Positions 33,965-47,907 of a stretch of 64,000 nt of DNA are shown piece after piece. The position numbers and the translations under genes were made by a program. The stretch covers positions 197,807 through 261,806 of the IMG/VR virus record IMGVR_UViG_3300026097_000876. One strand, written 5' to 3'. The notes beneath the pieces were generated by a model. That model was not told where the DNA came from, did not search any database, and saw only the letters and a program-made list of their open reading frames with translations. Every line of letters starts with the position of its first letter. Within the stretch, counting starts at the first letter, position 1.

Positions 33965-33992
33965 ATAAGAAAATAAGTATAGGAAAATAAAA

Positions 33993-34829: not shown

Positions 34830-36289
34830 AGTTTTATGCAGTAGCCTTAAATATGCACGATCATAATACATATGACGGTGTAACACACTATCAACTAGAA
34901 AGACACACCCGTGCTAAACATAATCTAAATTATAAAAATGTTCATGATCCAGAACCGAGTAAACGTTTTTTTGATAATTTTGTAAAGACTAATGATAAAG
35001 TACTTTGCTTTACTGTTTCTAATCTAGGACAAGAATTTGTATTAGACCGGATTGAAAAAAAATTCGGAAAAGACTTTTTAAACTTCAGACCTAGCCATAT
35101 CTGGGATTGTTATCATACCGATGATTTTTATTATATCGATCATCATCAAAGTCATGCTACCTATGCTCTTCTAAGTTCAGGATTTCCGGAAAGTGACATT
35201 CTTGCTATCGACGGCAGAGGTTGGCAATTTAATTGTATTTTTGTTAACAAAGAAGGAAGAATAAAAGATCTTACAGATGAATTATCTATTGGCGGACTTT
35301 GGAATAGGCTATCGCAAGATCTTGGTTTTGGATATTTAGGCGCAGGTAAAGTAATGGGTCTTGCTGGTTACGGTAAGTATGATCATAGGGTTCACGCTAT
35401 GTTAGAAGTATATCTCACTAATGATAATAACCTTCCTAACTGGTATAAAAAAATTATCGACAGCTGCAACAAAGAAGATATTGCTTTTACTCTACAATAT
35501 GTTACAGAAGAATTAATTAAAAAATATGTATATCCTCTCAAAACTAGTGACAATTTGTGTGTAGCAGGCGGAGTAGCATATAATGGCTACATGAATGAGG
35601 AATTTACTAAACATTATAAAAACGTACATGTACCGCCTGCTGTTGGTGACGAAGGTCAGGCAATAGGTACTTACATGCATGCCGAATATGTAGTAAACGG
35701 AAATGTACACATTCCTTGTGTATACTCTGGTGTTGAACATAAGTACACACTACCAGATACATTTGAAGATTTGAATATCCCTAAACTGGCACAACAAATA
35801 GCAGATGGCAAAATAGTAGGATGGTTCCAAGGAAAGAGTGAAAGTGGTAATAGAGCACTAGGCAATCGTAGTATACTTGCAGATCCACGCAATCCCGATA
35901 TTAAAGATATTATTAACAGTAAGATTAAACTACGTGAAGACTTTAGACCGTTTGCTCCTAGCGTACTAGAAGAACATTATACAGAATATTTTGATACTAA
36001 TCAGCCATCGCCTTATATGAGCAGGATTGTAAAAGTTAAAGGTAACATCATACCGGGCGTAACTCACGTAGACAGTACAGCAAGGATTCAAACTGTTAAT
36101 AAAACACAGAATCAAAAATTTTATGATTTAATTAACGAATTTTATAAAATTACAGGAGTTCCTATGTTACTTAACACAAGTTTTAACTGTCAAGAACCTA
36201 TTGTAGAAACTCCGCACGAAGCATATGAAACTTATAACAAAACTTCTTTGGATATTCTTGTTATTAATGATAAAGTGATTGAAAAATGA
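34826..36289 (+). CDS. Carbamoyltransferase (NodU/CmcH/TobZ family)
   Basis: HHQSHA; GKVMGLAGYG; AGGVAYN; GNRALGNRSILADPR; FRPFAP; HVDSTARIQ; LLNTSFN. Confidence 0.9.
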   Translation: MKFYAVALNMHDHNTYDGVTHYQLERHTRAKHNLNYKNVHDPEPSKRFFDNFVKTNDKVLCFTVSNLGQEFVLDRIEKKFGKDFLNFRPSHIWDCYHTDDFYYIDHHQSHATYALLSSGFPESDILAIDGRGWQFNCIFVNKEGRIKDLTDELSIGGLWNRLSQDLGFGYLGAGKVMGLAGYGKYDHRVHAMLEVYLTNDNNLPNWYKKIIDSCNKEDIAFTLQYVTEELIKKYVYPLKTSDNLCVAGGVAYNGYMNEEFTKHYKNVHVPPAVGDEGQAIGTYMHAEYVVNGNVHIPCVYSGVEHKYTLPDTFEDLNIPKLAQQIADGKIVGWFQGKSESGNRALGNRSILADPRNPDIKDIINSKIKLREDFRPFAPSVLEEHYTEYFDTNQPSPYMSRIVKVKGNIIPGVTHVDSTARIQTVNKTQNQKFYDLINEFYKITGVPMLLNTSFNCQEPIVETPHEAYETYNKTSLDILVINDKVIEK

Positions 36290-36891
36290 TAGACGAAATT
36301 ATTTTTAGAAATGTACTAAAAGAAATTAAACAAAATTCAGAATATGCTGACGATATTATTGATTCATTCAGTGACAATCAGTTTATTGCTAAACGCAAAG
36401 TTTTAGAATATGCTAATAGATTAAATATACTAGATAAAGATTCAGAAGTAATTATTTTTGGATCTTGGTACGGAAGTATTTTAATTCCTGGATTAGTTGA
36501 TAAAGTAAAAAAAATTAGTTGTATTGATATTGACAAACGAGTTTTACAAACTGCAAAAAATAGATTCTTCAAAGATTATACCAATATAGATTATATTGCA
36601 GGCAACGTATTTGATTTAGATCTCAAAAGATATCACACGGCTAATCTTTTTATAAACACGTCGTGCGAACATATGCCGTCGATGAAGGAATTTTTATACT
36701 GGCCTGACCAAACCCATTTTGTCTTCACAAGTAATGATATGTTCAACATCGAAGGACACATAAATTGTGTAAACAGTTTAGATGAATTTAAAGAACAATT
36801 GCCCGAACGTGCAGAAGTATTGTATGAAGAAGAAGTAGAGGATACCAGAGGCACACGTTATATACTAGTCGGAAAAATTAACGGTATTTAA
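36286..36891 (+). CDS. Class I SAM-dependent methyltransferase
   Basis: VIIFGSWYG motif I; CIDID; INTSCEH. Confidence 0.65.
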   Translation: MIDEIIFRNVLKEIKQNSEYADDIIDSFSDNQFIAKRKVLEYANRLNILDKDSEVIIFGSWYGSILIPGLVDKVKKISCIDIDKRVLQTAKNRFFKDYTNIDYIAGNVFDLDLKRYHTANLFINTSCEHMPSMKEFLYWPDQTHFVFTSNDMFNIEGHINCVNSLDEFKEQLPERAEVLYEEEVEDTRGTRYILVGKINGI

Positions 36892-38125
36892 TTCGTATAC
36901 TTCTTGTAAACTGATCTAATTTTTGATAAATTTCTTCTACAGTTTTGCCTAGTAGAATTAATTGTCCGTTTTGATGCCCTATACTTGCATTCCAATTGTC
37001 TGGTATTACACTCTTAGAAGTTAGTGTGCTACTAAAATGATGTACACTTTCATCTGCCTCAGGCCAGTCGATACTTTCAATTGTTCCGGGTGCAAATCTA
37101 AATTGTTTTCCTAAAGAATAATTAAACTGCGTATCATGTTTTTGCGTAAAGTCTGAAATATAGTCTTTCGAATTTAGCTTAACTAATTCTCGAGTTACAT
37201 TATAACCGTATATTTTATGAAAACTTGTTGCAGTATGACTACTACCAGGACGCAAATTAGTTTCAATTACGTTAATTACATTTAAATCTTTATCGTAAAA
37301 AAATTCTGTTCGTAGAGCACCGTTTTTGATTTCGAGAACATCTGTTAGTTGTTGTAAAATTGATAGTACTTCGTCTGTTAAGAATTTTGGATCACTAGGG
37401 AACAATGCTTCTTCGTAATAGAAATAAGGTAATCTTTCTTGCTCTAATTTGCTTTTTTGATCTCTAGCATAATGTGTGTAAGGTTTAATTATACCGTCTT
37501 GTACATAACAGTTTACACCACTAAAATAATCAGCATCTGTATATTGTTGAACTAGATAATAATCATATTTCTTATCTAAATTCCATCCATTTGAACGATC
37601 TTGATCATCCATGAATGATTTTAATTCAGCTGCATTATGTATTTGTTTAATTCCGTTGCTTCCTGCCCCGTAGTTAGGTTTTACAATACAGGGATACTCC
37701 AATGTTGATAAGTCTTTAATTTCGTCATATCGATAGGACCAGTCTGGTCTAGGCAAATTTTGATTTTCTAATAATTTATGCCATGCTTCTTTACTTGCAC
37801 AGTGTGTTGCAGCAACTTCTCCAATGCCCTTAAATCCCATACGAGTGTTTACACATGCCATAGCCATGCTAGCATCGTTAGTACATGGGTGTGTAACAGT
37901 CATACTAGCGCCACTAGTTTTTGCAAGATTTACTAATGCATCGATATCCATATAACTTATAATATGAAATTCGTCTATCATGTCTTTTACTGTGTCGTAA
38001 TAGTATTTGCTAGTAATATCCATAGGATGTGTTGCTACTATTTTATATCCAAGTGCTTGTGCTTCTCGCATATAAAGATAACTATCATCAAAAACACCAA
38101 TGTGTAATGCTACTTTATCCGCCAT
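36878..38125 (-). CDS. ATP-grasp ligase (L-amino-acid-ligase-like)
   Basis: PCIVKPNYGAGSNG; LVQQY; IETNLRPG; C-terminal small domain. Confidence 0.8.
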   Translation of the reverse strand: MADKVALHIGVFDDSYLYMREAQALGYKIVATHPMDITSKYYYDTVKDMIDEFHIISYMDIDALVNLAKTSGASMTVTHPCTNDASMAMACVNTRMGFKGIGEVAATHCASKEAWHKLLENQNLPRPDWSYRYDEIKDLSTLEYPCIVKPNYGAGSNGIKQIHNAAELKSFMDDQDRSNGWNLDKKYDYYLVQQYTDADYFSGVNCYVQDGIIKPYTHYARDQKSKLEQERLPYFYYEEALFPSDPKFLTDEVLSILQQLTDVLEIKNGALRTEFFYDKDLNVINVIETNLRPGSSHTATSFHKIYGYNVTRELVKLNSKDYISDFTQKHDTQFNYSLGKQFRFAPGTIESIDWPEADESVHHFSSTLTSKSVIPDNWNASIGHQNGQLILLGKTVEEIYQKLDQFTRSIRIKYR

Positions 38126-39569
38126 AAATATCTCTTATATCTTTGCCTGTAATTTTTTTATATCGTTCTACTAGAAATGTTGGTGAGTCTAACGCAAATT
38201 TGTAACCTAAATCTCTGCAATGATTGCGTAATCTAAACCATCTTTCAATTCTTACTTTTTGTGTGTTATCACCGATTTCCCATGCTCCTACATCGTCATA
38301 GTCTACACCCATTTCTTGAAACTGATCGAATAGCGGCGTGCCTGGATAGATTCGCATAGTTGCTCCGAGACTGACTTGAAAAACTGTTCCATCTTTTGCA
38401 TACTTGGCATTTCGAGTAAACATGTCCATAGTTTCTTGAAATTCTTCCTCGCCTTCGCCCGGGTATCCAATTAGCATCATCATTACAGTATCGATGCCGT
38501 TTTTAGAACATTGTTCCAAAGTGTAGTCAATATCAACAGCTCTAGCACCCTTTTTCATTGCATTAAGAACTTTTTGACTGCCGCTCTCGATACCTAACAG
38601 CATTCTAGTACATCCGCTCTTTGATAACTTTTCGTATATTTCTGGACCTTGCGAATTAGGAGGTCTCACAATAAATTGTCCTCCCCATTTTACACCATCT
38701 AAATTTTCTTCAATGAGTGTGTCCATCATTGCATCCATTTGGGGAATATTACCGTTTAGTAAACTATCTGTAAAATAAAACTCTTTTATTCCTGGATGCG
38801 TCTTAACTTGATGTATAATTTCTTTTGCAATAGTTACTCCGCTTTTACTAGTAAAAGATGGCCAGCGTTTGCCTACATCACAAAACTTACAACGTCTAAT
38901 ACACCCTCTACTTCCAGTTAAGTATAACAGATCTGTTCCTTTTGGATCTTCAAATGGATCTCTAAACAAATGACTATATTGTGACAAGTCATAATCTGTA
39001 TAATCAGCAAACGGAAGTGAATCTAACTCTTTCATCTGTATAGGAAACTTTCCGTTTATTCCTGGATAGTCTGTATTTCCGTTAAGCAGATGTAGTATAG
39101 GATTTTCTCCTTCTGCTTCCACATATGCATAAATTCTATCTTGTTTAAGATTAGTAGGCCCGTAATCAGGTGATGCACCCGGTCCTCCTAATATAACTTT
39201 AACTTCGGGCAATCTAATAAGTATTTCGTCTAAGAACAAGTCACACATTACAAGTTGCCAATGACTTAATAATGTTATACCAACAAACTTTGGATTATAA
39301 CCTGCAATTTTCTCTACAGCCTGTTCTACTAACGGAACAAATATATGTTTAACTTTTTCAAAATATTTCTTGTTAATTAGTGTTTGGTCGTTGTCTAGCC
39401 AAAGATGAGCATATTCGTCTTTTACAATATTCCAAAATTCTACATTAAAGTCAATACATTTACTAGTATAACCATGTTCTTCGACAACTGCCTTTAGTGC
39501 TGCTGGCCCAATAAGAGGGCTTTGTACTTCAAATTTTGGAATACTAATAAAAACAATATCTTTATTCAT
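38115..39569 (-). CDS. Cobalamin-binding radical SAM enzyme (class B methyltransferase-like)
   Basis: N-terminal B12 domain (FVGIT...ILGGP...EGE); GSRGCIRRCKFC; FTDS; GIESGS; GYPGE. Confidence 0.85.
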   Translation of the reverse strand: MNKDIVFISIPKFEVQSPLIGPAALKAVVEEHGYTSKCIDFNVEFWNIVKDEYAHLWLDNDQTLINKKYFEKVKHIFVPLVEQAVEKIAGYNPKFVGITLLSHWQLVMCDLFLDEILIRLPEVKVILGGPGASPDYGPTNLKQDRIYAYVEAEGENPILHLLNGNTDYPGINGKFPIQMKELDSLPFADYTDYDLSQYSHLFRDPFEDPKGTDLLYLTGSRGCIRRCKFCDVGKRWPSFTSKSGVTIAKEIIHQVKTHPGIKEFYFTDSLLNGNIPQMDAMMDTLIEENLDGVKWGGQFIVRPPNSQGPEIYEKLSKSGCTRMLLGIESGSQKVLNAMKKGARAVDIDYTLEQCSKNGIDTVMMMLIGYPGEGEEEFQETMDMFTRNAKYAKDGTVFQVSLGATMRIYPGTPLFDQFQEMGVDYDDVGAWEIGDNTQKVRIERWFRLRNHCRDLGYKFALDSPTFLVERYKKITGKDIRDIYGG

Positions 39570-40344
39570 AAGTTCGATTTACCCTTCCTAAGTATATGAG
39601 AACAGCATATACTATAGTAGTTATCACACTTACTGATAAGACACTTGGACTAATGATGTCAGTAACATAACTCCACATAATAATTGGAAGAGTTTGAGTA
39701 CTATGATCTAATAACAACAACGCTACAATAAACTCGTCAAAACTAGTAATAAACGCAAGAGAACATCCTGCAAGCAATCCGGGCAACATAACTGGAAGTT
39801 GTATATCTTTTAATATTTGAAAACTATTTGCACCGCATAGTCTAGCACTTTTTGCAATATTTTCATCATAGTTATTTAGACTACTTAGCGTCATTAAAAT
39901 TACATAAGGAACACATAAAACAGTATGTGCTATAATAAGATTGATAAAACTGTTAGTAAACCCTATATCATTAAAAAAGAAAATCCAGCCAAGGCCAATA
40001 ATGATACTCGGTATTACAATAGGACTGATTATTACACTTAGAACTATTCCGTTTCTATATTGGTTCAACCACAACGCCGCAGGAACAGATAGTAGTATAC
40101 AACTAATAACAGTATATGCTCCTACTTGAAAACTAGTTACAATACTTTTATACCACATAGGATCTGTAAATAATTGGTTATACCATTTCAAGCTGAACTC
40201 AAAATCAGAAATTTTAAAATAGTTTCCACCGTCAACGCTAAACAAAATAATAACCAACATAGGCATTAACAAATATAAGAACATGCCATAAGCAAATAAT
40301 CTAAGCACGGGCGTCTCCTTTAAAGTTAATACGATAATAAACAT
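39562..40344 (-). CDS. potC: Polyamine ABC transporter permease, PotC-like
   Basis: FSLKWY; IIAHT; SARLCGA EAA loop; FITSFDEF; QTLP. Confidence 0.8.
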   Translation of the reverse strand: MFIIVLTLKETPVLRLFAYGMFLYLLMPMLVIILFSVDGGNYFKISDFEFSLKWYNQLFTDPMWYKSIVTSFQVGAYTVISCILLSVPAALWLNQYRNGIVLSVIISPIVIPSIIIGLGWIFFFNDIGFTNSFINLIIAHTVLCVPYVILMTLSSLNNYDENIAKSARLCGANSFQILKDIQLPVMLPGLLAGCSLAFITSFDEFIVALLLLDHSTQTLPIIMWSYVTDIISPSVLSVSVITTIVYAVLIYLGRVNRTYE

Positions 40345-41287
40345 AAAACAACATTAAACTAGTTGATAGCATAATAACTGTTAGCGCACTTGCTAGGCCC
40401 CAGTTTAATGTATATTGAACTTGTCTAATTATTTGTTCTGTAACAAACAGGCCTTTACTTCCACCTAACAGACTTGGAGTAATATAGTATCCAGTAACAC
40501 TCATAAATGTTAGTATGGTGCTGTTTGCAATACCTTTGATTGTTTGCGGCAAATACACATATCTAAATGTTTGAAATTTATTAGCACCTGAAATTGTACT
40601 TACTTTAATTAAATCGTTATTAACATTTTTCATAGCAAGATATATAGGTAATACACTTAGTGGCAGTGCGATATATACACTGCCTATATAAATTGCTGTA
40701 ATTGTATTCATAAGATCGAAAGGTTGTAACAATAATATCCAACTAACTGTACGACTTAAGAAGCTACTAAACAGCGGAATCAACACAACAAATAGTGCAA
40801 TCTTAGCTGCTTTGCCTTTTAGTTTAGTAAGATAATATGCAAGAGGATACGCTACTACTAAGCAAATGGCTGTAATAATTGCACTAAGAAGATATGTCCT
40901 TCCTATAACTTTTAAGTATAAGTCGTTAAATGCACGTTTAAAATTAGCAAATGTATAAGGCTTTACTTCTTGTTCTATTACACTCCAAAATGCAGGGTCT
41001 TGCCATCCAGGGTGTTCTAAACCTTTTCTAAACATACTTCGTGTTTTGTGATAGTGATGATTAAGGTAGGTGATAGATCTACGACTGTCCTCACGGGCTA
41101 AGTCACTTTTTATAGCTTCAGTCCGGTCTCCGCCGTTAACTACGTAGTCGGTTATGTTTGGAAGATAACGTTCAACAGTTGTGTTGTAAACACTATTTTT
41201 AAGAATTTCACCTAGTGGAAGGAGAAAGAACACTGCTAGAAAAAATACTAGCGGTATAATCTTTCCATGTTTCGCAAACAAATTCAT
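40301..41287 (-). CDS. potB: Polyamine ABC transporter permease, PotB-like
   Basis: ICLVVAYPLAY; SFLSRTVSW; ISGA..FQTF.YVYLP; YYITPSLLGG; NWGLASAL. Confidence 0.8.
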   Translation of the reverse strand: MNLFAKHGKIIPLVFFLAVFFLLPLGEILKNSVYNTTVERYLPNITDYVVNGGDRTEAIKSDLAREDSRRSITYLNHHYHKTRSMFRKGLEHPGWQDPAFWSVIEQEVKPYTFANFKRAFNDLYLKVIGRTYLLSAIITAICLVVAYPLAYYLTKLKGKAAKIALFVVLIPLFSSFLSRTVSWILLLQPFDLMNTITAIYIGSVYIALPLSVLPIYLAMKNVNNDLIKVSTISGANKFQTFRYVYLPQTIKGIANSTILTFMSVTGYYITPSLLGGSKGLFVTEQIIRQVQYTLNWGLASALTVIMLSTSLMLFYVYYRINFKGDARA

Positions 41288-41951
41288 TTACAAAATCACT
41301 CCTAGGATTATCAAGAATTTCTGTAGGACTGCCTACTTGCTCTACTTTTCCTTGATTCATAATAACAATAGTGTCGCACATATTAAATGCTTCAGTGAAG
41401 TCGTGTGTGACGTACACTACTGTTGTATTTTTAAGTAGCTGTTTAATATCTTTTTGTAATTTAATTCTTAGCTTTAAGTCTAGCGATGCTAAAGGTTCGT
41501 CCATTAGTATAACATCTGGATTATATACTAATGCCCTTGCAATTGCAACTCGCTGTTGTTGCCCACCGCTTAATTGTTTAGGATATTTATCAGCATGTTC
41601 TTCCATTCCTATAACATTTAAAATATTAGATACAGCGGATGTATTCTTGCCTTTTACTCTCAATGGATATGCTATATTTTCATAAGCAGTCATATTAGGA
41701 AATAAACTAAAGTTTTGAAACACCATTCCTAGTGGTCTTTTATTACTACTTAGGCTAGTAATATCCAAACCGTTAACTATTACTTGTCCACAGTCTGGTG
41801 TTTCAAACCCTGTAATGCAATTAAGTAGGGTACTTTTGCCGCTGCCACTAGGTCCTAGAACAGCGACATTCGATCCAGAAGAAACATTAAAAGTTACATC
41901 ATCGAGAACTTTATCTCGAAATGTTTTGCTAATGTTCTTTATTTCTAGCAT
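41208..41951 (-). CDS. potA: ABC ATPase, PotA-like, lacking the C-terminal TOBE/regulatory domain
   Basis: Walker A GPSGSGKS; VFQNFSLFP; LSGGQQQRV; ILMDEP; VTHD; the core ends at NPRSDFVNEF. Confidence 0.85.
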   Translation of the reverse strand: MLEIKNISKTFRDKVLDDVTFNVSSGSNVAVLGPSGSGKSTLLNCITGFETPDCGQVIVNGLDITSLSSNKRPLGMVFQNFSLFPNMTAYENIAYPLRVKGKNTSAVSNILNVIGMEEHADKYPKQLSGGQQQRVAIARALVYNPDVILMDEPLASLDLKLRIKLQKDIKQLLKNTTVVYVTHDFTEAFNMCDTIVIMNQGKVEQVGSPTEILDNPRSDFVNEFVCETWKDYTASIFSSSVLSPSTR

Positions 41952-43036
41952 TAGTCTAAGAGCCAGGCTTCCCAGCGTTCATTGATGCGTTCGCCATTGT
42001 CAGCCCACCATGCGCCGTCACGTGGAATGCTACCAGTATAGTTATTAGGGTTAGTAACCATTTCGGCTTCCATGTCTGATCCAGTGTCTACCGAAGTCCA
42101 GTTGCCTGAATTTAAATCAATTGAACTCTTACGTGTAGGCGAGTAAGGAATAATACGACTAATTAGTGCTAGTGTTTCTGTACTAGTAGCATGTTGCAAA
42201 AACGCCTTTACTTCAGGAGTCATTTGTCCTTTTGCTACTACCCAAGGAGAAACTGTATAAATTTGTGCATCCCAAATTTGCTCAATGCTTTGTCCGTCTA
42301 CGTTCTTGGCTTTCCAAAAACGTCCATTATAGCTTGCTAAAATTTGTACTTGTCCTGCACTCAATTGTTGAATACCAGCGGCTGCTTTGTCCCACCATAC
42401 AATATGATCTTTAATAGTATCTAACTTAGCAAATGCACGATCGAGTCCTTCGTCAGTTGCTAGTACATCACGTACAATGTTTCGATCCACTCCATCGGCA
42501 ATCAGTGCCCATTCTAAGTTATTGTAAGGACGGCGTTGTAATCCTCGCTTTCCTGGAAACTGTTCAACATCAAATACATCGTAAATTGTTTGTGGTGCGT
42601 TGTTAGCGTATGTTTCTGGATCGTATCCAAACTGAATACTGTATACTGCCTGTGGTGCCACACAATCTTTTAGCATACCAGGAAGAAAGTCCTCACTAGG
42701 TAGTGTACCGTCTGGTGCAGGCAGCAACACATCGTCGTGATTAAAGTTTTCTACTAAACCGTCTTCGCATGCAATAGCAAGTGCTTCCTGAGGAATATCA
42801 ATTACATCATATGTAATGTTTCCTGTTTCAATTTGTGTACGCAATGCTGCTAGTGCAGAGTGTGCATTTTTGATAACGTTTACAGTTACATCTGGATTCT
42901 GCTCAATAAACGGATCAATTGCTGCTCTTTGTTGTGCTTCGCCCCATGCACCGCCATAATTTACAATATTTACAGTACTGTCAGCATATGCTGAACTTGC
43001 AACAAGTGCTAGAACTGTCATAAAGGTATATTTCAT
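41951..43036 (-). CDS. potD: Periplasmic polyamine-binding protein, PotD/PotF-like
   Basis: Signal peptide MKYTFMTVLALVASSAYA; YGGAWG.AQ; FPGKRGL; LEWALIADG; DRAFAKLD.IK..IVWW; SD AGGAG. Confidence 0.8.
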   Translation of the reverse strand: MKYTFMTVLALVASSAYADSTVNIVNYGGAWGEAQQRAAIDPFIEQNPDVTVNVIKNAHSALAALRTQIETGNITYDVIDIPQEALAIACEDGLVENFNHDDVLLPAPDGTLPSEDFLPGMLKDCVAPQAVYSIQFGYDPETYANNAPQTIYDVFDVEQFPGKRGLQRRPYNNLEWALIADGVDRNIVRDVLATDEGLDRAFAKLDTIKDHIVWWDKAAAGIQQLSAGQVQILASYNGRFWKAKNVDGQSIEQIWDAQIYTVSPWVVAKGQMTPEVKAFLQHATSTETLALISRIIPYSPTRKSSIDLNSGNWTSVDTGSDMEAEMVTNPNNYTGSIPRDGAWWADNGERINERWEAWLLD

Positions 43037-43060
43037 TTCATCTCCTGTAAGTCTTACTAT

Positions 43061-43095
43061 AGTAATTATCTACGTATATAACTTAGATATTTACT
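43061..43095 (-). promoter_or_regulatory. Imperfect inverted repeat in the potD leader containing TAAATA and the TATATACGTAG motif
   Basis: Arms 43061-43072 and 43084-43095 pair at 11/12; TAAATA at 43088-43093 (minus strand); motif at 43070-43080. Confidence 0.4.
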
Positions 43096-43110
43096 TCTGA
43101 CATACTAATA

Positions 43111-43139
43111 ATAATACTACAATCAGCTCTAGTAGTCAA
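43111..43139 (-). promoter_or_regulatory. sigma70-type promoter TTGACT-N17-TATTAT for the potD operon
   Basis: -35 at 43134-43139 and -10 at 43111-43116 on the minus strand. Confidence 0.6.
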
Positions 43140-43167
43140 CTGTTTTATCGAGCATATATAATATACA

Positions 43168-44022
43168 ATGTCATATAAAGTAACACATAATCACCATCTT
43201 AGCGTTCGCAAAACAACAGATTATATTGTAAAATTAGGTCGTTGTGAGAACATGCCTATGGATTTTAAATCTGAAGCATTACGAGCTGCTAAGTTAATAG
43301 CAAAAGAATCTAATAATATATGGATTAGTTACAGCGGCGGTATAGACAGTGAGTTTATTATTCAAGTGTTTCTTGAAGCAGGCATCCAATTTAGAGTTGC
43401 CACAATTGTTATGAAAGACGGATCTAACGATTACGATCTACAGCACAGTAGAAATTTTTGTAAACGTATGGGTATCAAGCTACACGAATTTGAAATTGAT
43501 TTAGAAGAGTTTTATAAAAATGATCTAGAAACATATGCTGTTGCAACTAATTGTATTAGTCCACAGTTTCCGGTGCATATGTGGTTATGGGATCAACTAG
43601 ATGGATTTATAGTTGCAGGCCACGGTGATCCAATCTTTAAACGTAAAGATTCTAGATGGTATCTTCAAATTCAAAAAAAAGAAGACAGCGTATTTAGATA
43701 TGCTCAGTGGAGAAATAGAAACATGGCTCCGGGATTTTACGTATATACTCCGGAACTTCTACTAAGTTTTATGCTAGAAAAAGAAGTAAGTAATATGTTT
43801 ATTGCTCCTAAGTTAGCAGGGTTAAGAGATATTGCACAAGTCAAACATCTGGTTTATTCTAAATATTACGATATGGTCGAAAGAGAAAAAAGAACTGGCT
43901 TTGAGTTAGTAGATAACTTAAACAATGAATATAAAATACATTTAGAAAATACAATACCCGGACATGGCGTATTTCTACAATCAGTAGAAGACCTATTACA
44001 TAGAATTTGGCCTAAACTATGA
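43168..44022 (+). CDS. PP-loop (N-type ATP pyrophosphatase) family protein
   Basis: WISYSGGIDSE PP-loop; no QueC-type C-terminal cysteine cluster. Confidence 0.65.
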   Translation: MSYKVTHNHHLSVRKTTDYIVKLGRCENMPMDFKSEALRAAKLIAKESNNIWISYSGGIDSEFIIQVFLEAGIQFRVATIVMKDGSNDYDLQHSRNFCKRMGIKLHEFEIDLEEFYKNDLETYAVATNCISPQFPVHMWLWDQLDGFIVAGHGDPIFKRKDSRWYLQIQKKEDSVFRYAQWRNRNMAPGFYVYTPELLLSFMLEKEVSNMFIAPKLAGLRDIAQVKHLVYSKYYDMVEREKRTGFELVDNLNNEYKIHLENTIPGHGVFLQSVEDLLHRIWPKL

Positions 44023-44468
44023 TTATTAAACAAGTAGATTTTGAAACAGTGTTACCTGCGTGGGAAAACAATCTTTGGCCTAATCGCAAAGATCCTATTA
44101 AACCTACAAATAATATTTGTTATCTAGGTGGAAGAGATAAAGATATTAATAATCAAACACCTGTATTTTTTGCCGTGTACGATAATAAAACTATAGTAGG
44201 TGTAAACAGCGGCTTTCCTACACTACACGGAGGATTTCGTAGTAGAGGTATTTGGGTTGATCCGGCATATAGAGAAAAAGGTGTTGGGGCAATGTTGCTA
44301 AATGCTGTAATTGATTATGCTCGAGAGAATGAATATTCTTATGCATGGAGTATGCCAAGACAAAGTGCTCTATCAGCATATACTAATGTAGGCTTTGAGC
44401 AAACAAGCGATTTTTTTGACGAAGGCGTAGAGTTTGGTCCTAACTGTTTTGTAAGGATTGATCTATGA
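44019..44468 (+). CDS. GNAT acetyltransferase
   Basis: RGIWVDPAYREKGVG motif A; YTNVGF. Confidence 0.85.
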   Translation: MIIKQVDFETVLPAWENNLWPNRKDPIKPTNNICYLGGRDKDINNQTPVFFAVYDNKTIVGVNSGFPTLHGGFRSRGIWVDPAYREKGVGAMLLNAVIDYARENEYSYAWSMPRQSALSAYTNVGFEQTSDFFDEGVEFGPNCFVRIDL

Positions 44469-45937
44469 CTGATGTAGTTTTAGTTACTTTACCTAAAATG
44501 GAAATTAGAGCACCCTTAATTGGCCCGGCTGCTCTTAAAAGTATATGCGAAGCAGATGGGTACTCTGTACATTGCGTTGACTTTAATATCGAACTATATC
44601 ATCAATTGCGAACACAAGTTCCTGAATGGTGGATTTATAATGATCAAACATTTATGCAAGACGATTTATTTGACGAAGCATGGACTACTATATTAGAACC
44701 TATAGTTCACAGCTGGTGTAAAAAACTACAAGACCTAAATCCTAAAGTAATTGGTGTTACAGTATTAAGCATGTGGACCGAACGTATCTGTAATAAGTTT
44801 TTGCAAACACTAGAATTATATTGTCCAGATACCCGTGTAGTATTAGGGGGACCGGGAACACAGCCAGCATATGGTCCAAAGATGCTAGAAGCAAAAAAAA
44901 TTGATGCATACATTACAGGCGAAGGCGAAGTTAGTTTTTTAGAATATCTTAGAGGCAACAAATATTATCCTGGAATAAATGGCAATCCTGCTGAACAGAT
45001 TGGAGATATGAATACATTACCGTTTCCTGACTATAGTGATTTTGATTTATCAAAATATAGCAGCACTTGGTGGGAACCTCACAAAGAGCCAACAGGGTGT
45101 AAATGGTTGTATATTACAGGCACTCGGGGGTGTATTAAGCGATGCACTTTTTGTAATGTAGGATCAATATGGCCAAAGTTTGTTAGCAAAACAGGTGAAA
45201 CTATTGCTAAAGAAATAAAACATTATATGGATACTACAGGAGTAACTCACTATTATTTTACTGACAGTTTACTCAATGGTAATGTAAAGAATCTAGAAGA
45301 AATGGTAGACGCTATTATTTCTTTAGGTATTAAGCCTACTATAAAAGGACAATGGATTGCTCGTGGTAAAGATTTAATTAATAGTGAGCTATGGAAAAAG
45401 ATGGGCAGAGCAGGTTTCAAACAACTCTTAGTGGGTATCGAAAGTGGAAGTTATAAAACACGCAACGAAATGAAAAAGGGTGTTAGAGAAGAAGATATAG
45501 AATATACATTTGAACAAGCAAGCAAAAACAAAATTAGATGTATACCGTTGCTTATGGTAGGATATCCAACAGAGACAGCAGAAGATTTTGAGGAAAATAT
45601 TAAATTTTGGACTAGGTATAAAAAATATAATGACAATGGTACTATTCTAAAACCTAGTGTGATGGCAACGAATATTTTACCAGACACTCCTCTACATCAT
45701 AAATTTACCGGAAACGGACTAGAGTATGACGATTTAGGTAACTGGGTATATAAAGACAACACTATGAAAGTTCGAATCGAACGCTGGTTTAGATATCGAG
45801 ACGAGGCACATCGCTTAGGTTATGAACTTACTTTAGATACTCCTAAACATCTCATAAGAGAATACAAGCGTATTACTGGAATAGATCTTAGTGAAGAATA
45901 CAAACTCAAAGATACAGAAGAAATATGGAATGATTGA
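44465..45937 (+). CDS. Cobalamin-binding radical SAM enzyme, paralogue of 38115
   Basis: PLIGPAALK; VLGGP; GTRGCIKRCTFC; FTDS; GIESGS; GYPTE. Confidence 0.85.
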   Translation: MTDVVLVTLPKMEIRAPLIGPAALKSICEADGYSVHCVDFNIELYHQLRTQVPEWWIYNDQTFMQDDLFDEAWTTILEPIVHSWCKKLQDLNPKVIGVTVLSMWTERICNKFLQTLELYCPDTRVVLGGPGTQPAYGPKMLEAKKIDAYITGEGEVSFLEYLRGNKYYPGINGNPAEQIGDMNTLPFPDYSDFDLSKYSSTWWEPHKEPTGCKWLYITGTRGCIKRCTFCNVGSIWPKFVSKTGETIAKEIKHYMDTTGVTHYYFTDSLLNGNVKNLEEMVDAIISLGIKPTIKGQWIARGKDLINSELWKKMGRAGFKQLLVGIESGSYKTRNEMKKGVREEDIEYTFEQASKNKIRCIPLLMVGYPTETAEDFEENIKFWTRYKKYNDNGTILKPSVMATNILPDTPLHHKFTGNGLEYDDLGNWVYKDNTMKVRIERWFRYRDEAHRLGYELTLDTPKHLIREYKRITGIDLSEEYKLKDTEEIWND

Positions 45938-45964
45938 TACATATTTAATAAAGGATTAAACAAT

Positions 45965-46567
45965 ATGATAAACACACTTTATAAAGTACCAATTTGGATA
46001 CAAGACAATACATTGCCGCAAGATAAATTAGATATGCTAGAACAAGCATGCTACGACAAGTGTCAACCATTGTCAGATTATCCAGATGAATTTAATCCTG
46101 ATATTTTTAAATTTTCTCGTTCTAACAAAATAAATGTTCATACGGAGCCTGAATTTAAAGAAGTTACTAACTTAATGTTAACAGCCGCAAGAAATATGAT
46201 GTTAGAAATGAGTTACACACAAGAACAGGCTCAGCGTCTTAGAATTGTTAACAGCTGGTTTGCAATATATAAAAATAAAGATAATCTACCTATGCATACA
46301 CACCGTGATAGTTTCTTTTCAGGAGCATATTATATTAAAGATGTTACAGATTGTAAATTACGATTTATTCATGACATCTATAGAAATACACCTTACCCAG
46401 AAGATTTACATAATGAATGGGGCAAAAATGTTACAGACTTTGATTGTAAAGACGGACGAATTATTATATTTCCTAGTGACTGTATACACGGAATTGATCA
46501 GCTTAATAGTAATAAGCCCGATAATGAACCTATTAAAGTTATGTTATCGTATAATTTTAATTTTTAA
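45965..46567 (+). CDS. 2OG-Fe(II) oxygenase-like protein (TIGR02466-type)
   Basis: HTHRDSFFSGAYY; IFPS..IHG; MLSYN. Confidence 0.7.
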   Translation: MINTLYKVPIWIQDNTLPQDKLDMLEQACYDKCQPLSDYPDEFNPDIFKFSRSNKINVHTEPEFKEVTNLMLTAARNMMLEMSYTQEQAQRLRIVNSWFAIYKNKDNLPMHTHRDSFFSGAYYIKDVTDCKLRFIHDIYRNTPYPEDLHNEWGKNVTDFDCKDGRIIIFPSDCIHGIDQLNSNKPDNEPIKVMLSYNFNF

Positions 46568-47058
46568 ACACAGGCAACAATATGAATTCGATCCTCAAAA
46601 CTTCCGTTTAATGCTAGGTGCTTTAATCTAGTATCTAACCAATATAAATGACCTACTGATTCCATTCTTAATATTTCTTCGTCTACTATAAACATACAAT
46701 TATTATTTGTAGTTACAGGAATATGCATTCGCGGGGTTGGATCTGTGTGATATGAATAACATTCTTTAGAGCGCAGTGTCATTACTCTAGTTCTATATAA
46801 ATTATTTTCTTTAATAATACTATTAATATATGGTATATCGTAGTAACATTCGGTAATATCTGTTTCTTCAAAATGTGTTTTAGCAGTTCTTTCTTTGTTT
46901 ATAGGATCAAACACATCAAAATCACCTCTCCATGTTTGTAGATTATTGTTAGAATTTATAGCGTAGTTAATACTTTCTAATTCACTAATAATCTTTTCAA
47001 CATCATATTTTTTGCCTGTTTTTATAAATTTATTCACGTACCTTTTCCCTTCGGACAT
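46564..47058 (-). CDS. 2OG-Fe(II) oxygenase (aspartyl beta-hydroxylase-like)
   Basis: YHTD HxD; RMHIP; HLALN; RIHIV. Confidence 0.7.
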   Translation of the reverse strand: MSEGKRYVNKFIKTGKKYDVEKIISELESINYAINSNNNLQTWRGDFDVFDPINKERTAKTHFEETDITECYYDIPYINSIIKENNLYRTRVMTLRSKECYSYHTDPTPRMHIPVTTNNNCMFIVDEEILRMESVGHLYWLDTRLKHLALNGSFEDRIHIVACV

Positions 47059-47486
47059 ACAGTTAATTCTTTTACTCTATACGGCTGGTCCAATACCCAT
47101 TCAATTATACCTACTACATATTCTAAATCCATTTTAGGAGTGTCAATGTCTGCTACTCGTTCGGTATCAAAAAAACCAAAATTTAAACATGTAGTATCGT
47201 AATAATTATCAAAAAGTTGGCTGTTTGCATCACGCAGAGCTTTCTTTTCTACGCCATATCTATATGTTTTTTTTCCTGGATGATAAATCCAGTCACTTGC
47301 TGAACTTCCTATATTAATTACTTTTTTGTTTTTTTCTATTGCTTTGTAGAGTAATTTTACTTGAGAAAATTCGTCATGCTTACAGTTAATAAACACATCG
47401 CATTCGTCTAACGATTCGCAATTGCCGTATTTTTCTTCAAGAACTTTTCCTAGACCTCGTCTTGTTCCTGTGATATAAAATTTCAT
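47034..47486 (-). CDS. Minimal short-chain dehydrogenase/reductase
   Basis: TGTRRGLG; INIGSS; YGVEK (YxxxK); only 150 aa. Confidence 0.7.
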   Translation of the reverse strand: MKFYITGTRRGLGKVLEEKYGNCESLDECDVFINCKHDEFSQVKLLYKAIEKNKKVINIGSSASDWIYHPGKKTYRYGVEKKALRDANSQLFDNYYDTTCLNFGFFDTERVADIDTPKMDLEYVVGIIEWVLDQPYRVKELTVCPKGKGT

Positions 47487-47553: not shown

Positions 47554-47907
47554 ATGGCATGGGGCTATCATTTATTAGTGGACTGTAAGCAAGGCGACAT
47601 TCCTAGTATTACTAGCAAAGAAAATGTATCTACTTTTGTTAGGAAATTAGTAAAAGGAATTGACATGGTAGCATACGGTGATTTAATGATTGAACGCTTT
47701 GCTACACATGATCCTGATAAAGCCGGTATTAGTTTTTGTCAAATGATTGAAACGTCAAACATTACAGGACATTTCGTCGAACTTAATGGAAACTTTTATA
47801 TTGATGTTTTTAGTTGTAAACCTTATGATACTCATACAGTGCTGGATTTAATACAAGAATATTTTAATCCAGCATCTGTTAGCACAACTTTTATTAATAG
47901 AGATTAA
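47554..47907 (+). CDS. speD: Pyruvoyl-dependent S-adenosylmethionine decarboxylase proenzyme family
   Basis: GYHLLVDC; IETSNITGHF (self-cleavage serine); IDVFSC; 117 aa. Confidence 0.8.
   Translation: MAWGYHLLVDCKQGDIPSITSKENVSTFVRKLVKGIDMVAYGDLMIERFATHDPDKAGISFCQMIETSNITGHFVELNGNFYIDVFSCKPYDTHTVLDLIQEYFNPASVSTTFINRD

What the first reader, a model, noticed from the sequence alone, without database searches (positions are those of the whole stretch)
36878..46567. Candidate new system: polyamine import-and-conjugation cassette of two divergent operons, each with a paralogous B12 radical SAM enzyme
Seen: leftward potD-potA-potB-potC-B12 rSAM-ATP-grasp, with every junction overlapping (1, 80, 44, 8 and 11 nt). 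Rightward from the same 130-nt spacer: PP-loop ATPase-GNAT-B12 rSAM-2OG oxygenase. The two rSAMs align end to end (PLIGPAALK, RGCIxRCxFC, FTDSLLNGN, RIERWFR, YKxITG). speD is ~1 kb further on. Established: ATP-grasp and PP-loop enzymes form amide/amidine bonds with amines (TilS uses lysine), and some phages carry polyamine-modified bases (putrescinylthymine in phiW-14). Inference: the phage imports an amine, ligates, methylates and acetylates it, and attaches it to DNA, tRNA or virion glycan.
Basis: partly seen in the sequence, partly recalled or inferred. Interest (0 to 1): 0.9.

Follow-up and report, generated by a model that had tools for sequence, protein, structure and literature searches.

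The report
Phage amine import-and-ligation gene island
An uncultured marine jumbo phage carries a complete nutrient importer wired to a set of amide-forming, decarboxylating, acetylating and radical-SAM enzymes; this gene set recurs in related phages, probably makes a modified amine conjugate, and has no characterised counterpart in any phage.

Summary

The link between transporter and enzymes is real. The importer, ATP-grasp, PP-loop protein and GNAT sit together, in at least six different gene orders, in phage contigs whose proteins are only 35-60% identical. speD is the gene most tightly linked to the ATP-grasp. One contig holds a minimal module of just the importer, PP-loop protein, ATP-grasp and GNAT.

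The two B12 rSAMs belong to a separate trio with an N-terminal-twitch rSAM at 24617-25951. That trio also occurs alone, in phages and in Bdellovibrionota. The cassette is one end of an rSAM-rich island of about 25 kb lying between tail-fibre genes.

The ATP-grasp folds like L-amino-acid ligases, which points to a small-molecule product.

"Polyamine" is plausible because of speD, but it is not shown. The binding protein belongs to a clade that binds GABA, opines or betaine-type osmolytes.

Nothing supports attachment to DNA, tRNA or glycan. The function remains unproven.

The parts
41951..43036 (-). Periplasmic solute-binding protein (361 aa) with a Sec signal peptide ending AYA|DS
   Evidence: PF13416, 136 bits. 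No NCBIfam match. Best solved relative is 8jv1, named 'spermidine/putrescine-binding', 4.6e-53, followed by GABA and mannopine/agropine binders. Signal peptide read from the translation. Orthologs are 52-62% identical in L004, L091, L100 and L101.
41208..41951 (-). ABC transporter ATPase (247 aa, no C-terminal TOBE domain)
   Evidence: PF00005, 130.8 bits. Best NCBIfam matches are PhnT2 at 282 bits (cut-off 458) and PotA at 256 bits (cut-off 482).
40301..41287 (-). ABC importer permease, PotB-like
   Evidence: PF00528. PotB scores 118 bits against a cut-off of 348.
39562..40344 (-). ABC importer permease, PotC-like
   Evidence: PF00528. PotC scores 111 bits against a cut-off of 326.
38115..39569 (-). 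B12-binding radical SAM enzyme, paralog 1
   Evidence: PF04055 plus PF02310. C223-x3-C227-x2-C230 is invariant. No characterised subfamily is reached. It forms an orthologous clade with copies in L003, L004 and L007.
36878..38125 (-). ATP-grasp ligase of L-amino-acid-ligase type (415 aa)
   Evidence: Model pLDDT 91.9. Foldseek gives TM 0.78 to YwfE/BacD, 0.75 to BL00235 and 0.68 to RizA. K149 and R292 are invariant; E288 and N290 are at least 90% conserved. The family has 24 proteins in 5.8e9 and 10 representatives at E<=1e-30 in 1.84e9.
43037..43167 (.). 131-nt divergent intergenic spacer
   Evidence: Promoter-like hexamers face both ways, but the regional count is no higher than in shuffled sequence. 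No Rfam match.
43168..44022 (+). Divergent PP-loop ATP pyrophosphatase (284 aa); no glutaminase domain and no conserved Cys
   Evidence: SGGxDS is invariant. Model pLDDT 89.9. The fold core resembles carbapenam/beta-lactam synthetase, AsnB, TtuA, LarE and TilS, but TM is only 0.3-0.43. Profile against PDB: TilS at 1.3e-3.
44019..44468 (+). GNAT N-acetyltransferase (149 aa)
   Evidence: PF00583, 46.8 bits. Weak solved relatives are YncA and PaiA. No SpeG model matched.
44465..45937 (+). B12-binding radical SAM enzyme, paralog 2
   Evidence: PF04055. PF02310 scores 30.8 bits, just under its cut-off of 32.1. 45% identical to paralog 1. Orthologs are 65-67% identical in L004 and L007.
45965..46567 (+). 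Fe(II)/2OG oxygenase (PF13759, TIGR02466-like)
   Evidence: His/Asp motif residues are visible in the translation.
46564..47058 (-). Cupin related to Asp/Asn beta-hydroxylase and LpxO
   Evidence: PF05118, 27.1 bits. HxD motif is visible. It is the second most frequent neighbour of the PP-loop family in viral contigs, 35 of 78 loci.
47034..47486 (-). Conserved 150-aa protein of unknown function
   Evidence: No Pfam match. Orthologs lie next to the cupin gene in L004, L101, L183 and L184.
47554..47907 (+). SpeD-family pyruvoyl decarboxylase (117 aa)
   Evidence: PF02675, 59.5 bits. S68, H73 and C88 match the catalytic S63/H68/C83 spacing. It lies directly beside the ATP-grasp in L004/7/8, L185-188, L193, L196, L199, L201 and L202.
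24617..25951 (+). N-terminal-twitch radical SAM protein, the third member of the rSAM trio
   Evidence: NF033640 scores 310 bits against a cut-off of 170. In L004 and L006 the same family sits between or beside the two B12 rSAMs, at 332 and 200 bits.
26620..36891 (+). Upstream half of the island: rSAMs 27808 and 32269 (+32904 SPASM-like piece) and 33993, kinase-like 28536, DegT aminotransferase 29117, nitroreductase 31592, carbamoyltransferase 34826, and methyltransferase-like 36286
   Evidence: In L183/L184 these genes follow the ATP-grasp directly on the same strand. The 36286 family neighbours PP-loop genes in 29 of 78 viral loci. Its methyltransferase reading rests only on motifs I saw in the translation.

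Best explanation
The cassette is one end of a conserved, phage-borne biosynthetic island.

Its working core has five parts:
- a binding-protein-dependent ABC importer, which brings a small amine-bearing metabolite from the host periplasm into the infected cell;
- a SpeD-family pyruvoyl decarboxylase, which supplies a decarboxylated amine (putrescine- or agmatine-like, or decarboxylated SAM);
- an ATP-grasp enzyme of the L-amino-acid-ligase type, which joins a carboxylate to an amine through an acyl-phosphate;
- a divergent PP-loop ATPase, which adenylates a second carboxyl or carbonyl group so that it can be amidated;
- a small GNAT, which acetylates a free amine.

A separable tailoring module then probably methylates and hydroxylates unactivated carbons. 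It consists of two paralogous B12 radical SAM enzymes, an N-terminal-twitch radical SAM enzyme and Fe/2OG oxygenases.

The product is most likely a small, N-acetylated, amide-linked amine conjugate made during infection.

Shown here: the domain identities, the intact catalytic motifs, the folds and the conserved linkage. Inferred: the substrate, the order of the steps, the product and what the phage uses it for.
For: Linkage:
- The importer, PP-loop protein, GNAT and ATP-grasp are adjacent in the window, L004/5, L007/8, L183-185, L188/196, L189, L195, L200 and L091, in at least six gene orders. ATP-grasp identity to the window runs from 37% to 79%.
- L091 holds only these seven genes.
- speD abuts the ATP-grasp, with 4-nt overlaps, in lineages down to 33% identity.
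- Part of the enzyme set (PP-loop protein, GNAT, a distant ATP-grasp, a B12 rSAM and an Asp/Arg-hydroxylase-like gene) also clusters on L093, a contig that carries bacterial housekeeping genes and no transporter.

Enzymology:
- The ATP-grasp fold matches L-amino-acid ligases, TM 0.68-0.78, and its ATP-grasp residues are conserved.
- The PP-loop motif is invariant and there is no conserved Cys, which argues against sulfur transfer.
- The SpeD catalytic Ser/His/Cys are intact.
- The binding protein has a signal peptide and lies in the polyamine/GABA/opine clade.

Separable rSAM module:
- The trio occurs alone in L003 and L006.
- The two paralogs come from one duplication in the phage ancestor.

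Genuinely phage-encoded:
- The island sits between tail-fibre genes.
- The flanking backbone genes recur in many independent assemblies.
Against: - No substrate was identified for any of the proteins.
- The binding protein matched no NCBIfam model and the PotA/B/C-like subunits miss the family cut-offs. A marine protein annotated PotD binds glycine betaine and DMSP, not polyamines (PMC11485210).
- No aminopropyltransferase (SpeE) was seen, so a role for decarboxylated SAM has no partner enzyme.
- In L183/184 the cassette runs straight into DegT, carbamoyltransferase and other sugar-type genes. GT-like genes lie upstream in the window. A sugar-linked product therefore cannot be excluded.
- The PP-loop family's commonest partners across viral contigs are membrane FA-desaturase-like and LpxO-like enzymes. 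This hints at a lipophilic substrate in those other islands.
- Only 64 kb of a genome of at least 262 kb was examined.
Confidence: 0.45

Rival explanations
1. The architecture is the same but the chemistry is not polyamine chemistry. The importer takes up an osmolyte, GABA-like omega-amino acid or opine-like compound. The ATP-grasp, PP-loop protein and GNAT build an N-acetylated dipeptide amide or a pseudo-peptide antimetabolite. Known pathways of this kind are N-acetylglutaminylglutamine amide, dapdiamide and tabtoxin, all of which combine an ATP-grasp ligase with an asparagine-synthetase-type PP-loop enzyme.
For: After 8jv1, the binding protein's solved relatives are GABA and mannopine/agropine binders. 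SAR11 'PotD' binds betaine and DMSP. The ATP-grasp's nearest folds are dipeptide ligases from antimetabolite pathways, BacD and RizA. The PP-loop fold's top match is carbapenam/beta-lactam synthetase. The composition of the three named pathways is from my own knowledge and was not tested here.
Against: The tight linkage between speD and the ATP-grasp across distant lineages points to a decarboxylated amine. The PP-loop protein lacks the glutaminase domain found in AsnO, DdaH and TblS. Its TM-scores to those enzymes are low (0.3-0.43).
Confidence: 0.2
2. The whole island builds and decorates an amino sugar or aminocyclitol-like unit. This unit goes onto the virion, for example the tail fibres, or onto the host envelope. 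The cassette supplies and attaches an aminoacyl or amine side chain, much as an ATP-grasp and a decarboxylase do for the side chain of butirosin.
For: The same island holds a DegT sugar aminotransferase, a NodU/TobZ-type carbamoyltransferase, a kinase-like protein, twitch/SPASM rSAMs and two paralogs (23697, 25944) with a GT-A-like DxD motif. The island lies between tail-fibre genes. In L183/184 the ATP-grasp is followed directly by these genes. L094 carries a UDP-glucose dehydrogenase next to PP-loop and rSAM genes.
Against: No recognised glycosyltransferase, nucleotidyltransferase or sugar dehydratase was found. The minimal module in L091 has no sugar genes within 5 kb on either side. The ATP-grasp fold matches ligases that act on free amino acids. 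The butirosin analogy is from memory.
Confidence: 0.15
3. One reading: the imported or synthesised amine is attached covalently to phage DNA or to tRNA, as a hypermodified base.
For: PP-loop enzymes include TilS, which is the best profile hit at E 1.3e-3. L092 has a ThyX gene next to the ATP-grasp. The window also carries a FolE and a QueE-like gene at 56-59 kb, so some base-modification chemistry may exist in this phage.
Against: No aGPT-pyrophosphorylase, 5-hydroxymethyluracil kinase, DpdA/TGT or DNA glycosyltransferase was found among the window ORFs scanned. TilS scores 20.6 bits against a cut-off of 93.6. There are no tRNA genes in the window. The ATP-grasp resembles small-molecule ligases.
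Confidence: 0.08
4. The rSAMs, oxygenases, ATP-grasp and GNAT mature a ribosomal peptide, or modify a phage or host protein after translation.
For: The rSAMs' weak best NCBIfam matches include RiPP C-methyltransferases, and SPASM/twitch partners are typical of peptide maturases. An S8 peptidase follows the cluster in L004 and L007. In L003 the trio lies 3 kb from a phage EF-G gene.
Against: No conserved short precursor ORF was found. All scores are far below the family cut-offs (78-92 bits against 282). The ATP-grasp fold is of the amino-acid-ligase type, not the graspetide or RimK type. A peptide route does not explain the importer or SpeD.
Confidence: 0.05
5. There is no joint function. The importer is a stand-alone auxiliary metabolic gene set that boosts host nutrient uptake, and it happens to lie beside unrelated enzymes in a variable region.
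For: The island lies in a variable region between tail-fibre genes. Its gene content differs from one relative to the next.
Against: Adjacency persists through many rearrangements and down to 37% protein identity. Genes overlap by 4 nt. In L091 the PP-loop gene sits inside the transporter operon.
Confidence: 0.05

Closest known systems
E. coli PotABCD spermidine/putrescine ABC importer
   Same: Four-component architecture: periplasmic binding protein, one ATPase and two BPD-type permeases. PotA, PotB and PotC are among the best NCBIfam matches.
   Different: All scores are far below the equivalog cut-offs: 256 vs 482, 118 vs 348 and 111 vs 326. The binding protein matched no NCBIfam model. The ATPase lacks the regulatory C-terminal domain. 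The genes are phage-encoded and embedded among biosynthetic genes.
GABA/opine/osmolyte-binding branch of PotD-like binding proteins (Atu4243-type GABA binders, MotA; SAR11_1336 by function)
   Same: These are the binding protein's closest solved relatives after 8jv1. The setting is marine and low in G+C.
   Different: The ligand here is unknown. I could not find out what ligand 8jv1 binds. Homology to SAR11_1336 itself was not tested.
L-amino-acid ligases BacD/YwfE, BL00235 and RizA
   Same: Best structural matches, TM 0.68-0.78, at 13-17% identity. ATP-grasp catalytic residues are conserved.
   Different: The family is distinct and tiny, with 10 representatives at E<=1e-30 among 1.84 billion. 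It is almost entirely phage-borne. Its genomic partner is a SpeD decarboxylase rather than an antibiotic pathway.
Phage SpeD homologs: AdoMetDC and the derived ornithine and arginine decarboxylases (PMC9992855, PMC10407285)
   Same: Class 1b size and intact catalytic Ser/His/Cys. The nearest isolate homolog is phiN3 SpeD at 41% identity.
   Different: It is not a solitary gene here but is operon-coupled to an ATP-grasp. It lacks the Pro that is conserved in bona fide AdoMetDCs. It has Gln, Thr, Phe and Tyr where the ornithine-decarboxylase group's four diagnostic residues would fall. I mapped those positions from the paper's text alone, so this is an inference. That survey mentions no transporter, ATP-grasp or rSAM.
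Class B (cobalamin-dependent) radical SAM methyltransferases, e.g. PhpK, ThnK/TokK, GenK, PoyB/C
   Same: N-terminal B12-binding domain plus a CxxxCxxC radical SAM core.
   Different: No characterised subfamily model is reached; the best score is 95 bits against a cut-off of 600. The closest solved sequence hit is E 1.9e-9. The enzymes always come with an N-terminal-twitch rSAM (NF033640). Methyl transfer itself is assumed, not shown.
Putrescinyl-thymine hypermodification of phage phiW-14
   Same: A phage that uses a polyamine as a building block.
   Different: That pathway uses a 5-hydroxymethyluracil DNA kinase and aGPT-pyrophosphorylases (from my own knowledge). None was detected among the window ORFs scanned.

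Membership tests
PotABCD polyamine importer | Binding protein, ATPase and two permeases encoded together | tested here: met
   Pfam PF13416, PF00005 and PF00528 twice, in adjacent overlapping genes.
PotABCD polyamine importer | Subunits reach the curated PotA/PotB/PotC/PotD model cut-offs | tested here: not met
   PotA 256 vs 482, PotB 118 vs 348, PotC 111 vs 326. No model matched the binding protein.
PotABCD polyamine importer | Binding protein binds spermidine or putrescine | not testable with these tools
   Solved relatives include one protein named polyamine-binding (8jv1), GABA binders and opine binders. A marine PotD-annotated protein binds betaine and DMSP (PMC11485210).
Cobalamin-dependent radical SAM (class B) enzymes | CxxxCxxC cluster motif in a radical SAM core | tested here: met
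   PF04055 scores 70.7 and 61.9 bits. C223, C227 and C230 are invariant in 20 homologs.
Cobalamin-dependent radical SAM (class B) enzymes | N-terminal B12-binding domain | tested here: inconclusive
   PF02310 scores 32.9 bits for paralog 1 (cut-off 32.1) and 30.8 bits for paralog 2, just below the cut-off.
PhpK P-methyltransferases / RiPP C-methyltransferases | Reaches the subfamily model cut-off | tested here: not met
   95 vs 600 and 92 vs 282 for paralog 1; 78 vs 282 for paralog 2.
ATP-grasp L-amino-acid ligases | Three-domain ATP-grasp fold closest to LAL structures | tested here: met
   Foldseek TM 0.78 (3wo1), 0.75 (3vot) and 0.68 (4wd3), on a model with pLDDT 91.9.
ATP-grasp L-amino-acid ligases | Ligates two free amino acids | not testable with these tools
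   No assay was possible. Sequence identity to LALs is only 13-17%.
PP-loop ATP pyrophosphatases | SGGxDS motif in a Rossmann-like alpha/beta domain | tested here: met
   S56, G57, G58, D60 and S61 are invariant in 25 homologs. Foldseek probability is 1.0 to CarA, beta-LS, TtuA, LarE and TilS.
TilS lysidine synthetase | Reaches the TilS N-domain model cut-off and has tRNA-binding C-terminal domains | tested here: not met
   20.6 vs 93.6 bits. TM to TilS is about 0.3.
PP-loop sulfurtransferases (TtuA, LarE, MnmA) | Conserved catalytic or cluster-binding cysteines | tested here: not met
   No Cys is invariant or nearly invariant in alignment A2.
SpeG/SSAT polyamine N-acetyltransferases | Matches a SpeG-type model | tested here: not met
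   The GNAT's NCBIfam matches are RimI, ArsN2 and PRK10514, all below cut-off. PaiA is hit only weakly, E 0.0066.
SpeD (class 1b pyruvoyl AdoMetDC family) | PF02675 domain with the processing Ser and the catalytic His and Cys | tested here: met
   59.5 bits against a cut-off of 25. S68, H73 and C88 are spaced +5 and +20, as in T. maritima S63/H68/C83.
Bona fide AdoMetDC within the SpeD family | The Pro that is fully conserved in bona fide AdoMetDCs (PMC10407285) | tested here: inconclusive
   The window reads H-F-V-E where I recall T. maritima reading H-T-W-P-E, so there is no Pro. However phiN3 SpeD, a proven AdoMetDC, shares this motif type. The figure that defines the position was not available.
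Phage thymidine hypermodification (putrescinyl-thymine type) | 5-hydroxymethyluracil DNA kinase and aGPT-pyrophosphorylase genes | tested here: not met
   No such Pfam match among the window ORFs scanned. Not every window ORF was scanned, and the rest of the genome (at least 262 kb) was not seen.
RiPP biosynthetic cluster | A conserved short precursor-peptide gene next to the maturases | tested here: inconclusive
   Locus comparisons turned up no conserved short ORF shared across relatives. No dedicated search was made.

The most novel reading that the evidence does not exclude
A lineage of marine jumbo phages runs its own supply chain for a new class of tailored amine conjugates. The phage imports a precursor through a complete phage-encoded ABC importer. 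It makes a diamine with a neofunctionalised SpeD. It then ligates, amidates, acetylates, C-methylates and hydroxylates the compound. The product would condense or covalently decorate the very large genome or the virion, or act as a phage-made bioactive metabolite. This would be the first phage-encoded binding-protein-dependent importer shown to feed a phage-encoded multi-step biosynthetic pathway.
Probability: 0.3. Interest if true: 0.85.

Novelty: new variant of a known kind. Interest (0 to 1): 0.7.

Why it matters
Phage auxiliary metabolic genes are usually single enzymes that adjust host pathways. A 2023 survey of viral polyamine genes found that phages almost never carry more than one such enzyme, and it does not mention transporters (PMC9992855).

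This phage group is different. It carries a full periplasmic-binding-protein importer, a decarboxylase, two ATP-dependent ligase-type enzymes, an acetyltransferase and at least six radical SAM enzymes in one island. The ATP-grasp and close PP-loop families are essentially confined to these contigs.

If the product is identified, three things follow:
- it would show that phages can run natural-product-like pathways fed by their own uptake system;
- it would give a function to widespread phage gene families that are currently unannotated (the PP-loop protein, the cupin, the 201-aa methyltransferase-like protein and the N-terminal-twitch rSAM);
- it would explain the rSAM-dense clusters of Bdellovibrionota.

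The minimal seven-gene version (L091) is small enough to test in E. coli.

Tried and rejected
- DNA search of the cassette against 50,697 GenBank phages: no match.
- Protein searches against the same collection. The binding protein had no match. The PP-loop protein had one weak hit, in Ralstonia jumbo phage RsoM2USA. The rSAM had only a 24%-identity hit in Streptomyces phage SF3. The permease hit 24 mostly unannotated fragments.
- PHROGs gave no functional names for the enzymes or for the upstream unknowns.
- Two literature searches for the ligand of PDB entries 8jv1-8jv4 found nothing relevant. The SAR11 binding-protein paper does not list those entries.
- A riboswitch or other RNA element in the spacer or elsewhere in the window: none found.
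- Promoter and terminator scans were no better than shuffled sequence.
- A diversity-generating retroelement acting on the Mtd_N fibre: no template/variable repeat pair in 36-64 kb.
- The PP-loop protein as a QueC: rejected, because QueC is absent from the sequence and fold hits.
- The PP-loop protein as a sulfurtransferase: rejected, because there is no conserved Cys.
- A carbapenem-like pathway. I recalled from memory the class-level resemblance of a PP-loop synthetase, three B12 rSAMs, a GNAT and 2OG oxygenases. It is not supported: no crotonase-type gene was found and TM-scores to carbapenam synthetase are low.
- A phosphonate import and P-methylation reading, prompted by PhnT2 and PhpK being the top NCBIfam names. 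All scores are far below cut-off, and the binding protein is not PhnS-like.

Full report
OBSERVATION

Minus strand:
- binding protein 41951-43036
- ABC ATPase 41208-41951
- permeases 40301-41287 and 39562-40344
- B12 radical SAM enzyme 38115-39569
- ATP-grasp 36878-38125

The overlaps are 1, 80, 44, 8 and 11 nt. The two long ones are longest-ORF values and may be shorter in reality.

Plus strand, after a 131-nt spacer (43037-43167):
- PP-loop protein 43168-44022
- GNAT 44019-44468
- B12 radical SAM enzyme 44465-45937
- PF13759 2OG oxygenase 45965-46567

Pfam confirms every domain. The two rSAMs are 45% identical over 480 residues, and all five quoted motifs are present. speD starts 987 nt downstream.

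The window is 100% identical, over the 484-residue rSAM match, to IMG/VR contig UViG_3300026097_000876 (261.8 kb). A 331.6 kb contig carrying the same proteins also exists. Backbone genes resemble those of PA5oct- and Phosso-type jumbo phages. G+C content is even across the region.

IS THE LINKAGE REAL?

Yes. I collected relatives through the rSAM, the ATP-grasp, the PP-loop protein and the binding protein and mapped window homologs onto them.

The importer, PP-loop protein, GNAT and ATP-grasp lie together in:
- the window
- L183/184
- L004/5 and L185
- L007/8
- L188/196
- L189
- L195
- L200
- L091

These loci show at least six different gene orders and strand arrangements. ATP-grasp identity to the window runs from 79% down to 37%.

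In most relatives everything is on one strand. L004 reads: binding protein, GNAT, PP-loop, 2OG, an unknown gene, ATPase, permease, permease, B12 rSAM, twitch rSAM, B12 rSAM, speD, ATP-grasp. The window's two divergent operons are therefore a local rearrangement, not a design feature.

L091 carries a minimal version: binding protein, PP-loop, ATPase, two permeases and ATP-grasp in one tight operon, with the GNAT convergent. It has no rSAM, oxygenase or speD within 10 kb.

speD is the gene most tightly coupled to the ATP-grasp. It lies immediately adjacent, often with 4-nt overlaps, in L004/7/8, L185-188, L193, L196, L199, L201 and L202. The last two have ATP-grasp proteins only 33-35% identical to the window's.

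THE SYSTEM IS BIGGER THAN THE FINDING, AND IT IS MODULAR

The two B12 rSAMs belong with a third enzyme, an N-terminal-twitch rSAM of family NF033640. In the window this is 24617-25951, scoring 310 bits against a cut-off of 170. In L004 and L006 the same family sits between or next to the B12 pair, at 332 and 200 bits.

That trio occurs without any transporter in another jumbo phage (L003). It also occurs among housekeeping genes on L006, which matches a 1.2 Mb Bdellovibrionia contig (L018).

A tree shows that the window's two paralogs fall into two sister orthologous clades. These come from a single duplication in the phage ancestor. The Bdellovibrionia pair duplicated independently.

The nearest cellular rSAM relatives, at 38-42% identity, are in Bdellovibrionota. 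There they sit in extraordinarily rSAM-dense clusters. L089 has at least 11 rSAM genes in 21 kb. These clusters also hold homologs of the window's upstream genes 23697, 24617, 25944, 27808 and 32269.

Upstream of the cassette the window carries:
- three more rSAMs
- a kinase-like protein
- a DegT aminotransferase
- a nitroreductase
- a carbamoyltransferase
- a 201-aa protein that reads like a SAM methyltransferase

. In L183/184 these genes follow the ATP-grasp directly on the same strand.

The whole island, about 23.7-47.9 kb, lies between a 4694-aa FG-GAP protein with tail-collar fibres on one side and an Mtd_N fibre on the other.

The PP-loop family is widespread in IMG/VR, with 106 matches. 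Among the 78 loci analysed, the frequent neighbours were:
- FA-desaturase-like enzymes, 47 loci
- LpxO/AspH-like cupins, 35 loci
- the 201-aa family, 29 loci
- GNATs, 25 and 11 loci (two clusters)
- Rieske proteins, 18 loci
- B12 rSAMs, 17 loci

. The transporter was not among them. The binding protein was found in only four IMG/VR contigs and in none of 50,697 GenBank phage records.

L093, a contig that carries bacterial housekeeping genes, clusters a PP-loop protein, a GNAT, an FA-desaturase, a distant ATP-grasp, a B12 rSAM and an Asp/Arg hydroxylase, again without a transporter.

WHAT THE PROTEINS LOOK LIKE

- ATP-grasp. The model is confident (pLDDT 91.9). Its best structural matches are L-amino-acid ligases: YwfE/BacD at TM 0.78, BL00235 at 0.75 and RizA at 0.68. 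K149 and R292 are invariant, and E288 and N290 are at least 90% conserved. The family is tiny: 24 proteins among 5.8 billion, and 10 representatives at E<=1e-30 among 1.84 billion.
- PP-loop protein. The model is confident (pLDDT 89.9) and the SGGxDS motif is invariant. Only the nucleotide-binding core resembles known enzymes (carbapenam/beta-lactam synthetase, AsnB, TtuA, LarE, MnmA, TilS), at TM 0.3-0.43. It has no glutaminase domain. It has no conserved cysteine, so sulfur transfer is unlikely and carboxyl or carbonyl adenylation followed by amidation is the likeliest chemistry.
- Binding protein. It has a Sec signal peptide. Its best solved relative is 8jv1, named 'spermidine/putrescine-binding' (E 4.6e-53), followed by GABA and mannopine/agropine binders. 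I could not find 8jv1's ligand. No NCBIfam model matched the binding protein, and the PotA/B/C-like subunits score far below their cut-offs.
- A caution from the literature. The SAR11 protein annotated PotD binds glycine betaine and DMSP, not polyamines (PMC11485210).
- SpeD homolog. It keeps the processing Ser and the catalytic His and Cys (S68, H73, C88). Its nearest isolate homolog is phiN3 SpeD at 41% identity. PMC9992855 reports phiN3 SpeD as a bona fide AdoMetDC that nevertheless groups with the ornithine-decarboxylase clade.
- SpeD, continued. The window protein has Gln, Thr, Phe and Tyr around the active site, in the order PMC10407285 lists as diagnostic for the ornithine-decarboxylase group. 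phiN3 lacks the Thr. I mapped these positions from the paper's text without its figure, so a putrescine-forming activity is an inference.
- No spermidine synthase gene was seen in the island.
- GNAT. It is not SpeG-like. Its only solved hits are weak: YncA and PaiA.

BEST EXPLANATION (confidence 0.45)

The core is a phage-run route with five steps:
1. It imports a small amine-bearing metabolite.
2. It generates a decarboxylated amine with the SpeD homolog.
3. It joins a carboxylate to an amine with the amino-acid-ligase-type ATP-grasp.
4. It amidates a second carboxyl group via the PP-loop enzyme.
5. It N-acetylates the product.

The rSAM trio and the Fe/2OG oxygenases are an optional tailoring module. 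The ligase fold, and the stand-alone minimal module in L091, favour a free small-molecule product.

The polyamine flavour rests mainly on the speD linkage, not on the transporter.

RIVALS

- A non-polyamine osmolyte, GABA or amino-acid substrate that yields an N-acetyl dipeptide amide or an antimetabolite (0.20).
- A sugar-linked product for the virion or the host envelope, suggested by the DegT, carbamoyltransferase and GT-like genes and by the tail-fibre setting (0.15).
No known hallmark genes were found among the window ORFs scanned.
- Peptide or protein modification (0.05).
- Unrelated auxiliary genes with no joint function (0.05). The conserved linkage contradicts this.

NOVELTY

Every domain belongs to a known superfamily, so this is a new variant of a known kind: a viral biosynthetic or auxiliary gene cluster.

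The combination, however, has no characterised or annotated counterpart in the collections searched. It joins a complete binding-protein-dependent importer, a SpeD-coupled ligase and at least six rSAM enzymes in one phage island. The 2023 survey of viral polyamine metabolism does not mention transporters, ATP-grasp enzymes or radical SAM enzymes.

The function is unproven. The minimal module makes it directly testable.

Noticed in passing
window 115-20264 (+): A 4694-aa ORF with an FG-GAP repeat is followed by a tail-collar-domain protein and two paralogous fibre-like proteins. The biosynthetic island starts right after this block. L093, the contig with bacterial housekeeping genes, also has an FG-GAP/UnbV protein next to its PP-loop/ATP-grasp cluster.
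   Followed up: partly
window 56079-58908 (-), also 60387-61516 (-): A QueE-like radical SAM gene (PDB 6nhl, E 4.4e-5, N-terminus only) and a GTP cyclohydrolase I gene (132 bits) lie 2 kb apart. A second PF13759 2OG oxygenase and a phosphoribosyltransferase are nearby. This may be a 7-deazaguanine or pterin pathway. QueC, QueD and DpdA were not identified.
   Followed up: partly
L089 and L090 (Bdellovibrionota MAG contigs): Clusters with at least 11 radical SAM genes in 21 kb. They also hold homologs of window genes 23697, 25944, 27808 and 32269, a QueC-like PP-loop gene, an Asp/Arg hydroxylase and an FA-desaturase. The product is unknown.
   Followed up: partly
window 23697-24620 and 25944-26627 (+): Two paralogs with no Pfam, NCBIfam or PHROG match carry a conserved 'I-V-F-I-S-Y...N-A-E' start and a VDGD motif that looks like a GT-A DxD. 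Homologs are 37-55% identical in many phage loci and in Bdellovibrionota loci.
   Followed up: partly
L139 (IMG/VR 3300042484_002676): Nine FA-desaturase-family paralogs surround two PP-loop paralogs, a Rieske protein and a B12 rSAM. This is an extreme case of the variable toolbox that accompanies the PP-loop family in viral contigs.
   Followed up: no
L003:10001-17993: In another jumbo phage the B12/B12/twitch rSAM trio lies about 3 kb upstream of a phage-encoded EF-G that is split into two ORFs. An HSP70 gene is nearby. L091, which holds the minimal importer module, comes from the same sample and could be the same phage.
   Followed up: no
window 47904-48899 (-): A tail-fibre-like protein has a major-tropism-determinant N-terminal domain. 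No template/variable repeat pair or other sign of a diversity-generating retroelement was found in 36-64 kb.
   Followed up: yes
window 32269-33239 (+) and 27808-28551 (+): The rSAM core (212 aa) and a SPASM/twitch-like piece (111 aa) are separate ORFs that overlap by 4 nt. The split is conserved in L183. Bdellovibrionota homologs are single proteins of 350-380 aa.
   Followed up: partly
window 36286-36891 (+): A 201-aa protein with no database match reads like a class I SAM methyltransferase (a G-x-G-like motif, then an acidic 'CIDID' motif). It is one of the commonest neighbours of the PP-loop family in viral contigs, 29 of 78 loci. Its 3' end overlaps the ATP-grasp gene's 3' end by 14 nt.
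   Followed up: partly
L101 / L180 (IMG/VR 3300048011_000824): This phage contig, which carries the binding protein, also has a B12 rSAM that groups with the Bdellovibrionales copies rather than with the phage clade. That hints at gene exchange between these phages and Bdellovibrionota, or at a Bdellovibrionota host.
   Followed up: no
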